NCBI RefSeq assembly: GCF_016432865.1
Contig: NC_067401.1
Coordinates: 283,650,001-283,714,000, forward strand
Length of the DNA stretch: 64,000 nt
Reading direction: 5' to 3'
DNA from: Antechinus flavipes
Taxonomy: Eukaryota
The translations under genes were made by a program, and so were the position numbers. Positions 10,628-63,161 of this stretch are shown here, one piece after another; positions within the stretch are counted from its first letter, which is position 1; the number at the start of each line of letters is the position of its first letter. The notes beneath the pieces are model-generated. The model had not been told where the DNA came from. It searched no databases and saw nothing but the letters and a program-made list of their open reading frames with translations.

Positions 10628-10757
10628 NNNNNNNNNNNNNNNNNNNNNNNNNNNNNNNNNNNNNNNNNNNNNNNNNNNNNNNNNNNNNNNNNNNNNNNNN
10701 NNNNNNNNNNNNNNNNNNNNNNNNNNNNNNNNNNNNNNNNNNNNNNNNNNNNNNNNN
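10628..10757. other. Assembly gap (130 N)
   Basis: Run of N. Confidence 1.
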
Positions 10758-18824: not shown

Positions 18825-18953
18825 NNNNNNNNNNNNNNNNNNNNNNNNNNNNNNNNNNNNNNNNNNNNNNNNNNNNNNNNNNNNNNNNNNNNNNNNNNNN
18901 NNNNNNNNNNNNNNNNNNNNNNNNNNNNNNNNNNNNNNNNNNNNNNNNNNNNN
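18825..18953. other. Assembly gap (129 N) next to a CT-rich low-complexity tract
   Basis: Run of N. Confidence 1.
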
Positions 18954-38352: not shown

Positions 38353-38520
38353 NNNNNNNNNNNNNNNNNNNNNNNNNNNNNNNNNNNNNNNNNNNNNNNN
38401 NNNNNNNNNNNNNNNNNNNNNNNNNNNNNNNNNNNNNNNNNNNNNNNNNNNNNNNNNNNNNNNNNNNNNNNNNNNNNNNNNNNNNNNNNNNNNNNNNNNN
38501 NNNNNNNNNNNNNNNNNNNN
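38353..38520. other. Assembly gap (168 N)
   Basis: Run of N. Confidence 1.
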
Positions 38521-41882: not shown

Positions 41883-43536
41883 TCCAGAGCACAACCACCA
41901 GAAGAGAATAAGAGGAAACCAGTTTTGGGGAAACTTGGAAACCTGTTCACTGCTGGGAGAAGGCGGAATACCAGGAATGGATCTGAGGGTTCTACAAACT
42001 CAGTTCCTAAATTAGTTTCTCCTTCTAAGCTGTCAGAAAAAGAGAAGGAAAAAAGTAAATCTGGCATTCAATCAAAAAATCCAGATGGATCTGTAGAGAG
42101 CTCATCTACAGAAAAAACACATGAGCCAGAGAATGACCATGCAGAGGACCAGGGCCAAACAAACTCTCTTGATGCTGAGCTGTCATCTTGCTTGAGCAAC
42201 AGTGAAACAGTGGCTGTACAACTCTGTGATGAAAGTGATTCATCCAAATTAGAACCTTCAGAGCAAGGAAGAGACACTTTCCCAGATCCCACAGCCACTG
42301 CCAAGGACCTGCCTTCCAATCCAGAATATTCCTCTAGGCAAGAGAACTCAGAGATCCTTCCTCCCAGTTTGGAGAAACTTTCAGGCAGTAGTCACTCAAG
42401 CGAGGAGGATAAAAGGTGTCTAACCAATGGCTCTCCAGAAGACTCAAACAGCCATCCACCTGAAAACTCGTTCATTTTAACCAGCTTACCAAAAGAGCTG
42501 GGTGGAAATTGTCTAAGTAATTTGCAGATTGAGAGCACAGACAGTAAGCCCGAGTTTTCGCATGCAACCTCAAAGGCTGTGCCATGTGCTTCAGATTCCA
42601 AAACCAACGAGCGTGCACACCCAGCTAAAGTTTTAACTTTGGATATTTATCTGAGGAAGACGGAGGAGGTGTCCCCCGTGGATGAACCAGTGGTTGTTTC
42701 TCTAGCGGAAGAAGATTGCAGTGATTCTGAGGAGATGGAAAAGCGGTCGAATGGCAGAAGGTCAGGGAGGAGGAGAAAATCTCAGAAATCGACTGACGCA
42801 CTCAACGGAGATAAAGTTCCGGTTGAGACTGTTACAAGTGAAGACTCCGTATTTGCTGAGGATGCCTCACCCGCTGCAGTGGCAGAAAAAGTCTCTGGGG
42901 AGAAGAAAGTAAAATCGCCGCAGGCAGCAACTGCTGCAGCTGCTTTACCTGAAAGGGGCGCTTTGGGATCTGGCCACGCGGACTCCAAGGCAGCGGCTGC
43001 ACACCTGAAAGGACACTCGAAAGGAGACTCGGACAAAGGCAGGCAGCCCCAGCTCCCCTCCACTTCCCCTACCAAAAGGAAGAGCAGAAGCCGTCTGCCT
43101 GAAGCTAGCCCCCTCTCACCTCCTGGAGGCTCCAAAAATCAAGGCAAAGATTCCCCTCCTAAAAAGCAATCCGGGGCGGCTCCCGACGGGAATTCCGCTA
43201 GTACATCCAAGGCACCGCAGCAGGAGAAAAGGCAGCGCCCGCAGCTGGGGAAAAGGCAGCGACAGCCGCTGGACCGGGTAATGAGAACGGGGAGGAAGGG
43301 GCGGTGGCAGCAAAGGTTATTCCTCGCGAGCTCCCCGTAAAGAGCAGCACGTTGCTGCCCGAAATCCGCCCAGAGCACAAGAGAAGCTCTTTCCTCAACC
43401 ACTTGGATGGCAGAGCCGAGGGGGGCAGAAACAGAGGCGAGCTAACGAGACTACCAGCCAGTTCTGACCCTGACAACTGCAAACACAGAAATCACTTGGG
43501 TGCTGCTCGAGCAACTGTTACCACTAAAATTAATCT
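41883..43536 (+). CDS. CRYBG1: CRYBG1/AIM1 large coding exon (SRAQPPEENKRKPVLGKLGNLF...TVTTKINL), with an apparent 1-bp frameshift at about 43209-43212
   Basis: Acceptor tctgtctttttcag ends at 41882; donor CT|gtaagt at 43536/43537. Translation matches recalled human CRYBG1 motifs: SRAQPP, KPVLGKLG.LFTAGRRRN, HPAKVLTLDIYL, MEKRS.GRRSGRRR, IPRELPVKSS.LLPEI.PEHKR. The reading frame changes between 43202 and 43337. Confidence 0.93.
42600..43500. promoter_or_regulatory. Exonic CpG island around the internal Met (42735) of CRYBG1
   Basis: Dozens of CpGs and high GC content here, versus strong CpG depletion in the rest of the window (visual estimate). Confidence 0.75.
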
Positions 43537-53290: not shown

Positions 53291-55613
53291 TCCAGCCAAA
53301 CCCAAACATGTGGAGCTGAATTTCAAAGCCCCCAAGAATCTTGAGGGCTTGGGAAATGATCATAATCCATTTAACCAACCAGTTCATAAAGGAAATACAG
53401 CCAACAAGATTTCCTTATTTGAAAATAAGCGTGCTAGCAATAGCCCAAGACACACAGATAACCGAAGTGTGAAGAGTGTACCTTCAAAGACCTTTGTTGG
53501 TAGAGCAAAGCTTAATTTAGGGAAAAAAGTCAAGGAAAGTGAGCAACCTGAAAAGAAAGGAAATATGCAAAACAATCACCCAAATGGTGGCTTATTGAAA
53601 GAAGCCTCCGCAGAAAAGAATATTCCACCAGAAAATGATATTCTGCCAGCAACTACAAATCATGGGGAGACTGTTGATTGTCAGGTGGGCCACACTGAGA
53701 AGGCAGATGTTCAAAGAGACCCTGCTTGCCCTTTGGAACAAACAGGTGCTACTCAGATTCCAACTAAGGACCCAGAAATCCTTGGAGAAAACAATTTGGA
53801 GACTGTCAACAGCACAGCACTTGTGTTAGAAAACAAGGTTGACCTTGATCGGGATAATAAAGATTCAGCTCAAACAGTCCCATTAAAGCCTGATGCAGAT
53901 GTTCTCAACTTGCATCCTACAGTAGAGATTTCTCATAGTCCTTCGAACCAGCAGCTAGCATCTGTTTCCATGGCAACTAATGGTAATACCTCTGTAAGTT
54001 GTGATGGGGATACATCCCTGGCTAATAACAATTCTAGCACTGATGTGAAAAAACAGTCCCAGCCATCGTCAGCTTCCATAGGTCATACAAAGTGTGACTT
54101 GCCTGTCTCATGTGAAAATGAAAACAAAATGACAGTAACTGAACTTGGTGACAAAATTGCTGTGTCTGCAGAGCAGGATTTATTAAACACAGAAACTAAA
54201 TCGCCATCCAAAGTTCTTGTCCAGGTTAGGTCTTTTATGTTACCCGTGGAAACTGCTCAGGGTCGAGCCCCACATATCATTTTAGGTAGCTCAGAAGTCG
54301 AAGAAGTTCGATTGACAAGTTACTATAATGATGAAAATGAAGGGGATTCTTCTCACAGCTGCACTTATGTAAAAAATGAGGGGCCAGATAAGACCACCTC
54401 ACCCAAGGATGTAGAATGTGGAGGAGAGCACATAGAAAAATCTGGCCTACAGTCTGAGCCTTTGGAGTCAGAGAAAACTATGTCTACATCGACACCAAGT
54501 AATGACAACAAAATAGTTAGGGGAACTGAGTCAAGCCCTACCAGCTCACCTAGAAGCAAAGGCACTTTAGAACTTTTATCAAATCAAGTCTTCAAAGATG
54601 CTGAGAGCAGTCCTGCCAGTGTTATGAATGTTTCTGTTGGGAGTGATGACAGTTCTTTTGATTCTTCTTCTGATATGGAAAAATTCACAGAAATCATTAA
54701 AAAGATGGACAGCTCAATTTGTGTACCCCAGAAGAAAAAAAAGGCCAGGGTACCAAACTCTCCTGCTCCCCACTTTGCCATGCCCCCTATTCATGAAGAC
54801 AATTTAGAAAAAGTGCTTGATCCCAGTGTGTTTACTTTTGGACTGGGGAAAAATAAAGAAAGCCAGCAAGACATGTCACCAGGTATGCATCTCCTCCAAG
54901 GTCTAGATTTAAAATCTAAATTGAGACCTAAGCGTACTTCTGCAGAACAGAGCATTCTCTTCAAGTCTGGGAACACTCCTAGTAAAAATGAATTCGTGGA
55001 ATGTTCAGATACAAATGGAAAGGAAAATAGGGATGTCATAAACAGTGGAATTAAGAGATCTAGGCTAGAAAAAAGTGCTCTTTTCTCCAGCATGTTATCT
55101 TCTTCCCCTGTACCTAAAGAAAAAGTCTTCTCACCATCAGTGACATCAGTCAACACAATGACCACATCTTTTGGCACCTCCCAGAACAGTTCTCTTCTGC
55201 CAAAGTCTGATTCTGATGGAATATCAGGTCTTTCCACTCATCCCAGTGTTTCAGAAAATGAACTTCACAAACCTGCATCTGCCAACTCTTCAAAGATCTT
55301 TAACTTTGACTCATCAAGTAAATCACTTTCAGGTTTAAGAAGCCCAAACTATGTGGAAAAATATTTGCAAACAGTTGAAACTAAGAGAGATCCAGATTCA
55401 AGAAGCAACGTGACGTTACCAGAAACTAGACTTTCAGAACTTTCCAAGAATAAGAACAATAATGGTGTAGAAAAATCGAATTCATTTGAAAATGCTCTTA
55501 AATCACAGATGCCAAACTATGGAAACACTGATACAGATTTCATGAGTTATTTGAAATCTAGTATATATGAACCAAATATTTCCCTAGCTGGAATGTCATT
55601 ATCAGACAATCTG
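53291..55613 (+). CDS. CRYBG1: CRYBG1/AIM1 2323-nt coding exon (PAKPKHVEL...SLSDNL), disordered region
   Basis: Acceptor tttcttacag ends at 53290; donor CTG|gtgagc at 55613/55614. Open frame throughout. Motifs NPFNQPVHKGNTANKISLFENKR, SSSDMEKFTEIIKKMD, PHFAMPPIHED and KRSRLEKSALFSS match recalled human AIM1. Phase agrees with the preceding donor (CT+T = Leu). Confidence 0.97.
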
Positions 55614-59686: not shown

Positions 59687-59734
59687 GTATTTAATAGAAG
59701 TATGCAAAATAAAATCAATCCTCGACCTGGCAAG
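59687..59734 (+). CDS. CRYBG1: CRYBG1 48-nt exon (VFNRSMQNKINPRPGK)
   Basis: ttccag| acceptor and AAG|gtaaga donor, phase 0 at both ends; matches the recalled human QNKLNPRPGK linker. Confidence 0.95.
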
Positions 59735-59814
59735 GTAAGATATCTATAACCTGCCCTGATTAATAGTTTGTTAAAGTTGAATGAAACCTGATACAATTGG
59801 GACTATCTTAACAG

Positions 59815-59933
59815 GTGGTGATATATAGTGAACCCACTTTCTCGGGGAACTGCTTTGAAGTGTTCAGTGATATTCCTGATTGTACCTCTTGGAGTCTGTC
59901 ACCAGTGATCATTGTAAAAGTAGTTCGAGGATG
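59815..59933 (+). CDS. CRYBG1: CRYBG1 119-nt exon, first Greek-key motif of crystallin domain 1 (VVIYSEPTFSG...KVVRG)
   Basis: cttaacag| acceptor and TG|gtaaga donor; beta/gamma-crystallin signature YxxxxFxG. Confidence 0.96.
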
Positions 59934-62995: not shown

Positions 62996-63161
62996 CTGGA
63001 TTTTGTATGAGAAGCCAAATTTTGAAGGAAATTCAGTTCCTCTGGAAGAGGGAGAGTTGGAGTTATGTGATCCCTGGGGAGTGGAAGATAGTTCTGCAGA
63101 AAGTGAAGAGAAAGAATCTGCTAAGCCCCTTGTGATTGGTTCAATAAGACATGTGATTAAG
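62996..63161 (+). CDS. CRYBG1: CRYBG1 166-nt exon, second Greek-key motif (C/WILYEKPNFEG...VIGSIRHVIK)
   Basis: tttcctttttag| acceptor and AAG|gtaagt donor; TG+C completes Cys; crystallin signature WILYEKPNFEG and SIR. Confidence 0.96.

What the first reader, a model, noticed from the sequence alone, without database searches (positions are those of the whole stretch)
43209..43212. 1-bp frameshift in CRYBG1: assembly error or real loss-of-function allele
The sequence reads ACA TCC AAG GCA CCG (TSKAP...) and stops at 43338-43340. Adding one base gives TSK-GTAAGEK...VIPRELPVKSS, matching recalled human TKGTAA...IPRELPVKSS. Independently, the exon is 1654 nt but its splice phases (0 in, 2 out) need 3n+2, so one base is missing. 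As assembled, both long and short isoforms would be truncated before all crystallin domains and be likely NMD targets. All downstream exons are intact with canonical splice sites, and the assembly is gapped, so an error in GC-rich sequence is more likely. A real allele would be a recent knockout of a tumour-suppressor-like actin-binding gene.
Basis: partly seen in the sequence, partly recalled or inferred. Interest (0 to 1): 0.7.

Follow-up and report, generated by a model that had tools for sequence, protein, structure and literature searches.

The report
One-base gap in antechinus CRYBG1 exon
The large exon of the CRYBG1 gene in the yellow-footed antechinus reference genome is one base short, which breaks the reading frame. 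This is most likely a leftover error of the long-read assembly and not a real gene knockout, but no sequencing reads could be examined to settle it.

Summary
Exon 41883-43536 is 1654 nt (3n+1) but its splice phases need 3n+2. The entry frame stops at 43338-43340, and the frame that matches the orthologues is open only from 43202.

The window is Antechinus flavipes GCA_016432865.2. Tasmanian devil and dunnart CRYBG1 place the missing base after 43216 (43216-43219). With one base there, 62 of 63 residues equal the devil's.

The rest of the gene is intact: 19 canonical introns, six crystallin stretches and a ricin-type domain. The antechinus lineage carries as many private amino-acid changes as the devil's (21 vs 22). 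So a real lesion would be very young.

The RefSeq protein hides the shift behind a 65-nt GT..AG "intron" (43201-43265). Its splice signals are very poor, and it removes 22 residues that are coding in relatives.

The assembly is PacBio CLR built with wtdbg2, and one Pilon step is described.

My odds:
- consensus error: about 70%
- real allele: about 22%
- other: about 8%

The scan did not find this before on other DNA.

The parts
41883..43536 (+). Large coding exon of CRYBG1 (AIM1). It is 1654 nt, one base short of the 3n+2 that its splice phases require.
   Evidence: Sequence and splice sites. Translations. tblastn of Sarcophilus, Sminthopsis and A. flavipes CRYBG1.
43216..43219 (+). Best place for the missing base: in or just after the Pro codon CC- (GCA CC_ GCA GCA). 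The reading switches here from the entry frame to the frame that matches the orthologues.
   Evidence: I tried one N at every position from 43196 to 43344. The top score is after 43216, where CCN is Pro whatever N is. This gives 62/63 identity to Sarcophilus without a gap.
43338..43340 (+). Premature TAA in the entry frame, 196 nt before the exon's 3' end.
43199..43201 (+). TAG that closes the orthologue-matching frame upstream. It is the 5' limit of the interval in which the shift can lie.
43214..43273 (+). 24-nt tandem repeat, 2.5 copies (AAGEKAAP AAGEKAAT AAG in the orthologue frame), directly 3' of the shift. Local GC is 57-63%.
   Evidence: Tandem Repeats Finder. Composition. The same duplicated peptide is present in Sarcophilus and Sminthopsis.
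43201..43265 (+). 65-nt GT..AG 'intron' of the RefSeq model XP_051853433.1, which restores the frame by skipping 22 codons. I judge it an annotation device.
   Evidence: Exact threading of P0139 on L001. The donor is CTA|GTACAT, and there is 20% pyrimidine before the AG, against 50-95% in the 19 other introns. The skipped residues are present in Sarcophilus and Sminthopsis.
42735..42737 (+). Internal ATG (MEKRSNGRRS...) used as the start of the 1733-aa RefSeq model. The frame is open upstream to the exon start.
53291..55613 (+). Next CRYBG1 coding exon (2323 nt), intact.
   Evidence: 95.5% identical to Sarcophilus over 776 aa with no stop. Boundaries.
59687..59734 (+). CRYBG1 exon (48 nt), followed by a real 80-nt intron.
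59815..59933 (+). CRYBG1 exon (119 nt).
62996..63161 (+). CRYBG1 exon (166 nt), the last one inside the window. Fifteen more CDS exons follow in L001.

Best explanation
The frameshift is a residual consensus error of the Antechinus flavipes reference assembly. One base was dropped in or next to the proline codon at 43215-43217 (GCA CC_ GCA), in a GC-rich stretch that abuts a 24-nt tandem repeat. The animal's real gene would read ...TSKAPAAGEKAAPAAGEKAATAAGPGNENGEE... in frame and make a normal CRYBG1 protein.

Shown: the deficit, its place, the intact remainder of the gene, and the assembly method. Inferred: that the base is present in the animal.
For: 1. The window is GCA_016432865.2 (0 mismatches to L001 over 22,266 nt). 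That assembly was built from about 100x PacBio reads, corrected with canu, assembled with wtdbg2 and polished with Pilon using 50x 100-bp BGISEQ reads (PMC9290055). Single-base deletions are the typical residual error of such assemblies (established knowledge). A 1-bp frameshift in koala OPN1LW was shown by reads to be an assembly error (PMC10671557).
2. The lesion is absent from Sminthopsis and from two Sarcophilus annotations.
3. One added base gives 62/63 identity to Sarcophilus with no gap.
4. The remaining roughly 1576 codons carry no other lesion, and the 19 introns are canonical.
5. Private amino-acid changes are 21 in antechinus against 22 in Sarcophilus over 1732 columns. So there is no relaxation of constraint.
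6. CRYBG1 is retained in every marsupial found and widely in tetrapods.
Against:
- Pilon with 50x reads from the same animal should normally repair a simple 1-nt deletion in unique sequence of about 60% GC. A heterozygous indel is one reason for it not to.
- NCBI did not label the model LOW QUALITY PROTEIN with a corrected frame. It built around the shift instead.
- The dropped base is not in a long homopolymer (at most CCC or GG).
Confidence: 0.7

Rival explanations
1. A real, very young one-base deletion in A. flavipes, either heterozygous in the reference male or homozygous or fixed. It truncates both CRYBG1 isoforms after a 41-residue aberrant tail, before all beta/gamma-crystallin and ricin-type domains. 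It also makes the mRNA a target of nonsense-mediated decay. This would be a natural loss-of-function allele.
For: - The assembly, polished with reads from the same animal, still carries the deletion.
- RefSeq did not correct the frame.
- The stop lies 196 nt upstream of the next exon junction. All domains needed for actin binding lie downstream (PMC5529512).
- Wild animals do carry private loss-of-function variants (general knowledge).
Against: - There is no second lesion in about 4.7 kb of downstream coding sequence, and no excess of private amino-acid changes (21 vs 22). The event would therefore have to be recent.
- The gene is conserved in all marsupials found.
- My rough estimate, not a measurement: a single residual indel per long gene in an assembly of this kind is several times more likely a priori than a true frameshift.
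Confidence: 0.22
2. The deletion is real, but the transcript is rescued by splicing out the 65 nt at 43201-43265 (an intron inside the exon), as in the RefSeq model. The protein would lack 22 residues of a disordered, repeat-bearing segment and otherwise be complete.
For: GT at 43201 and AG at 43264-43265 exist. Removing 65 nt restores the frame and reproduces XP_051853433.1 exactly. The segment is variable in length among marsupials. The gene has real introns of 80 and 87 nt.
Against: - The donor CTA|GTACAT lacks G at -1 and +5.
- Only 20% pyrimidines precede the AG, against 50-95% in the other 19 introns.
- 65 nt is shorter than the gene's shortest real intron.
- The segment is coding in Sarcophilus and Sminthopsis.
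- Gene predictors are known to insert such mini-introns to step over frameshifts (general knowledge).
Confidence: 0.05
3. The exon model is wrong. A different real splice site or a two-base insertion, rather than a one-base loss, accounts for the phase problem.
For: From sequence alone, both frames are open over 43202-43337.
Against: The residue-for-residue, gap-free match to Sarcophilus on both sides of 43216 needs exactly one added base. A two-base removal would cost a residue. The exon borders are the same as in the orthologues.
Confidence: 0.03

Closest known systems
CRYBG1 / AIM1 of other dasyurids (Sarcophilus harrisii XP_031820324.1 and XP_012404709.2; Sminthopsis crassicaudata XP_074166270.1)
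   Same: Same exon structure. 97.2% (Sarcophilus) and 95.6% (Sminthopsis) amino-acid identity over 1732 shared columns. Same duplicated GEKAAPAA peptide beside the site.
   Different: Those genes read through in frame (TSKAPAAGEK, TSKAPSAGEK). The antechinus assembly lacks one base there.
RefSeq model XP_051853433.1 (A. flavipes CRYBG1, 1733 aa)
   Same: Built on this very sequence. 100% identical to the window's exons.
   Different: It starts at the internal Met at 42735. It removes 43201-43265 as a 65-nt intron and so hides the frameshift. It lacks 22 residues that the relatives have.
Single-base frameshifts that are assembly errors in long-read marsupial genomes (for example koala OPN1LW exon 1)
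   Same: A 1-bp deletion in an otherwise intact, conserved gene of a marsupial reference assembly. That case was resolved as an error by public reads (PMC10671557).
   Different: Here the read check could not be run, so the parallel is a prior and not a proof.
Human AIM1 C-terminal truncation (Delta859) studied by Haffner et al. 2017
   Same: A protein without the beta/gamma-crystallin repeats fails to bind the actin cytoskeleton (PMC5529512). The product of the frame as assembled would lack the same domains.
   Different: That is an engineered human construct. Here the truncation would be much earlier and the mRNA probably degraded.

Membership tests
CRYBG1 (AIM1) orthologue | Repeated beta/gamma-crystallin Greek-key domains in the C-terminal half | tested here: met
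   Pfam Crystall (PF00030), E 1.8e-133, 6 stretches in P0139, which is encoded exon by exon in the window and L001.
CRYBG1 (AIM1) orthologue | C-terminal ricin-type beta-trefoil domain | tested here: met
   Pfam Ricin_B_lectin (PF00652), E 3.2e-10, residues 1601-1728 of P0139.
CRYBG1 (AIM1) orthologue | Long disordered N-terminal exon collinear with named CRYBG1 proteins | tested here: met
   The exon at 41883-43536 aligns to Sarcophilus and Sminthopsis CRYBG1 at 91-98% identity, and to eutherian CRYBG1 at about 45%.
CRYBG1 (AIM1) orthologue | Conserved gene neighbourhood | not tested
   The window holds only this gene. The flanking genes were not examined.
Assembly consensus error | Raw reads of the same animal show the base that the assembly lacks | not testable with these tools
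Assembly consensus error | Single isolated indel in an otherwise intact, constrained gene, absent from relatives, in an error-prone assembly type | tested here: met
Unitary pseudogene / lineage gene loss | Several inactivating lesions or relaxed constraint | tested here: not met
   There is one lesion only. Private amino-acid changes are 21 (antechinus) vs 22 (Sarcophilus).
Unitary pseudogene / lineage gene loss | Lesion shared with related species | tested here: inconclusive
   Absent in Sarcophilus and Sminthopsis. Other Antechinus species could not be reached.

The most novel reading that the evidence does not exclude
The one-base deletion is real in the reference male (or in the species). 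Antechinus flavipes would then carry a natural, very recent knockout allele of CRYBG1, an actin-binding, tumour-suppressor-like gene that all other sampled marsupials keep.
Probability: 0.22. Interest if true: 0.4.

Novelty: not a real feature. Interest (0 to 1): 0.15.

Why it matters
If it is an error, the value is practical. The public RefSeq protein for antechinus CRYBG1 is wrong in two ways. It lacks 22 residues because of an invented 65-nt intron, and it starts at an internal methionine. Comparative studies that scan this assembly for gene loss would wrongly score CRYBG1 as inactivated.

If it is real, it would be a natural loss-of-function allele of a conserved cytoskeletal regulator in a marsupial used as an ageing model. 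That would be of moderate interest, mainly if homozygous animals exist.

Tried and rejected
I sent no DNA of that stretch to any DNA search. Protein translations were used in protein tools afterwards.

2. Read-derived ORFs from antechinus in the protein collection: three searches covered candidate lengths 97-849 and 1084-3448 aa. They found no dasyurid sequence from sequencing-run assemblies, only RefSeq or GenBank proteins.

3. DNA of the Sarcophilus and Sminthopsis genes, for a codon alignment and dN/dS: not delivered, because the gene ranges are 250-260 kb. The identity of the lost base (C of CCC, G of GG, or another) therefore stays open, and only a protein-level rate test was done.

4. 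Upstream exons of the long isoform are not in the window.

5. The A. flavipes genome paper and two marsupial gene-loss papers do not mention CRYBG1.

6. Earlier scan notes gave no read-based calibration of one-base frameshifts in this genome.

8. A real 65-nt intron is judged unlikely.

Full report
**What is in the sequence**

The exon begins after the acceptor ...ctttttcag at 41883 and ends before the donor gtaagt at 43536. It is 1654 nt long.

- The entry frame (TCC AGA GCA CAA = SRAQ...) stays open for 485 codons and stops at TAA 43338-43340.
- A second frame is closed by TAG at 43199-43201. It then runs open to the exon end, reading ...AAGEKAAPAAGEKAATAAGPGNENGEEGAVAAKVIPRELPVKSSTLLPEIRPEHKR...KINL.
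- The last two bases, CT, join the T at 53291 to make the Leu codon before PAKPKH.
- The exon therefore needs 3n+2 bases and has 3n+1.

**Where the window comes from**

An earlier scan note called this genome an antechinus. I checked this.

- The RefSeq protein XP_051853433.1 of Antechinus flavipes (P0139) matches the window's exons at 100%.
- Its locus L001 is GCA_016432865.2, chromosome CM028220.1, at about 283.7 Mb. It is identical to the window over the 22,266 nt they share.
- The genome paper describes about 100x PacBio reads, canu correction, wtdbg2 assembly and polishing with Pilon using 50x 100-bp BGISEQ reads. The result has 1107 contigs with a contig N50 of 51.8 Mb (PMC9290055).
- With so few contigs, the three N runs of the window are weak evidence of a "gapped" assembly. 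I did not look up their letters.

**Where the base is missing**

A library-wide HMMER search and a word-index search returned CRYBG1 of many mammals, including seven marsupials. The 90% cluster of the dunnart protein also holds two Tasmanian devil annotations and the antechinus model.

- Devil reads ...APDGNSASTSKAPAAGEKAAPAAGEKAAAAAGPGNENGEE....
- Dunnart reads ...NTSKAPSAGEKSAPAAGEKAAAAAGLGNENGEE....
- The window gives ...NSASTSKAP in the entry frame and AAGEKAAPAAGEKAATAAGPGNENGEE in the other frame.

In a script I put a single N after every position from 43196 to 43344 and scored the translation against both relatives.

- The optimum is after 43216, where the codon CCN is proline whatever the base is.
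- Positions up to 43219 are nearly as good.
- At the optimum, 62 of 63 residues equal the devil's and there is no gap.

So the deficit is one base in GCA CC_ GCA GCA, 4-7 nt 3' of the stated place. It directly abuts a 24-nt tandem repeat of 2.5 copies (43214-43273), in sequence of 57-63% GC. That read-through was made only inside the script and was sent to no search tool.

**How the public annotation treats it**

Threading P0139 on L001 reproduces the protein exactly as 21 coding pieces.

- The first junction removes 43201-43265, which is 65 nt. This restores the frame and deletes 22 residues that the devil and dunnart have.
- Its donor is CTA|GTACAT, and only 20% of the 20 bases before its AG are pyrimidines.
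- The other 19 introns have GTAAG, GTGAG or GTAAA donors and 50-95% pyrimidines. They are 80 nt to 14.6 kb long.

I read the 65-nt "intron" as a device of the gene predictor and not as biology. A real intron inside the exon gets 5%.

The model also starts at the internal Met at 42735, although the frame is open back to 41883.

**State of the rest of the gene**

- All downstream exons are present and free of stops. They are 91-100% identical to the devil and dunnart proteins.
- In a nine-marsupial alignment, the antechinus model differs from the devil's only by the 22-residue hole, a 5-residue shorter alanine run and two single-residue indels.
- Over 1732 shared columns, 21 changes are private to antechinus and 22 to the devil, with the dunnart as reference. 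The gene has therefore been under the same constraint on both branches.
- Pfam finds six beta/gamma-crystallin stretches and a ricin-type domain, all far downstream of the site. It finds nothing in the 485-residue entry-frame product.
- In human AIM1, a construct without the crystallin domains fails to bind actin (PMC5529512).
- As assembled, the gene would thus be null. The stop lies 196 nt before the next junction, which by the usual 50-55-nt rule makes the mRNA a target of nonsense-mediated decay (established knowledge).

**Error or allele?**

The decisive test is reads, and I could not run it.

I later used protein translations of the exon in protein tools, but no DNA of it in any DNA search.
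- As a substitute I looked for antechinus ORFs derived from public sequencing runs in the protein collection, over three length classes. There are none.
- The devil and dunnart gene DNA was not delivered because the genes span 250-260 kb. No codon-level test was possible.

What remains is weighing.

For an error:
- The assembly type is one whose typical residual fault is a single-base deletion.
- A published marsupial precedent exists: koala OPN1LW, shown by reads to be an error (PMC10671557).
- The lesion is not seen in the devil or the dunnart.
- The fit after adding one base is perfect.
- There is no second lesion and no rate excess.
- The gene is kept in every marsupial found.

For a real allele:
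- Polishing with 50x reads of the same animal should usually mend such a fault. A heterozygous site is one reason for a polisher to leave it.
- RefSeq did not flag a corrected frame.
- The dropped base is not in a long homopolymer.

I put 70% on a consensus error, 22% on a real and very young deletion, 5% on a real deletion with the mini-intron, and 3% on another exon model.

**Comparison with what is known, and verdict**

- The gene is an ordinary CRYBG1 orthologue. The domain and collinearity tests were met, and synteny was not tested.
- The lesion does not meet the marks of an old gene loss: there is one lesion and no relaxed constraint.
- The finding is most likely not a biological feature. 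Its practical yield is a corrected site, and the note that the RefSeq antechinus CRYBG1 protein carries an artificial 22-residue deletion and a shortened start.
- Interest is low, and moderate only if reads prove the allele real.

Noticed in passing
window 43201-43265 and 42735: The RefSeq protein XP_051853433.1 steps over the frameshift with a 65-nt GT..AG intron that has very poor splice signals. It also starts at an internal Met. The public protein therefore lacks 22 residues and the whole N-terminal part that relatives have.
   Followed up: yes
window 43214-43273: A 24-nt tandem repeat encodes AAGEKAAP twice. The duplication is shared with Sarcophilus and Sminthopsis. The wombat also has two copies, while opossum, wallaby, glider and monito del monte have one. 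The segment therefore varies in length among marsupials.
   Followed up: partly
window about 42925-42950: The alanine-rich run (PQAATAAAALPER) is 5 residues shorter in A. flavipes than in Sarcophilus and Sminthopsis. This is an in-frame length difference. I could not say whether it is natural or another consensus fault.
   Followed up: no
window 10628-10757, 18825-18953, 38353-38520: There are three N runs of 129-168 nt within 28 kb. The published assembly has only 1107 contigs, so these may be masks rather than gaps.
   Followed up: no
window 59735-59814; L001 34136-34222: There are two real, very short introns (80 and 87 nt) with good splice signals inside the crystallin-domain part of the gene.
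   Followed up: partly
window 1-41882: The upstream coding exons of the long CRYBG1 isoform (MSDQGGGQREV... in Sminthopsis and Monodelphis) are not in the window. They must lie more than 41 kb upstream of the large exon.
   Followed up: partly
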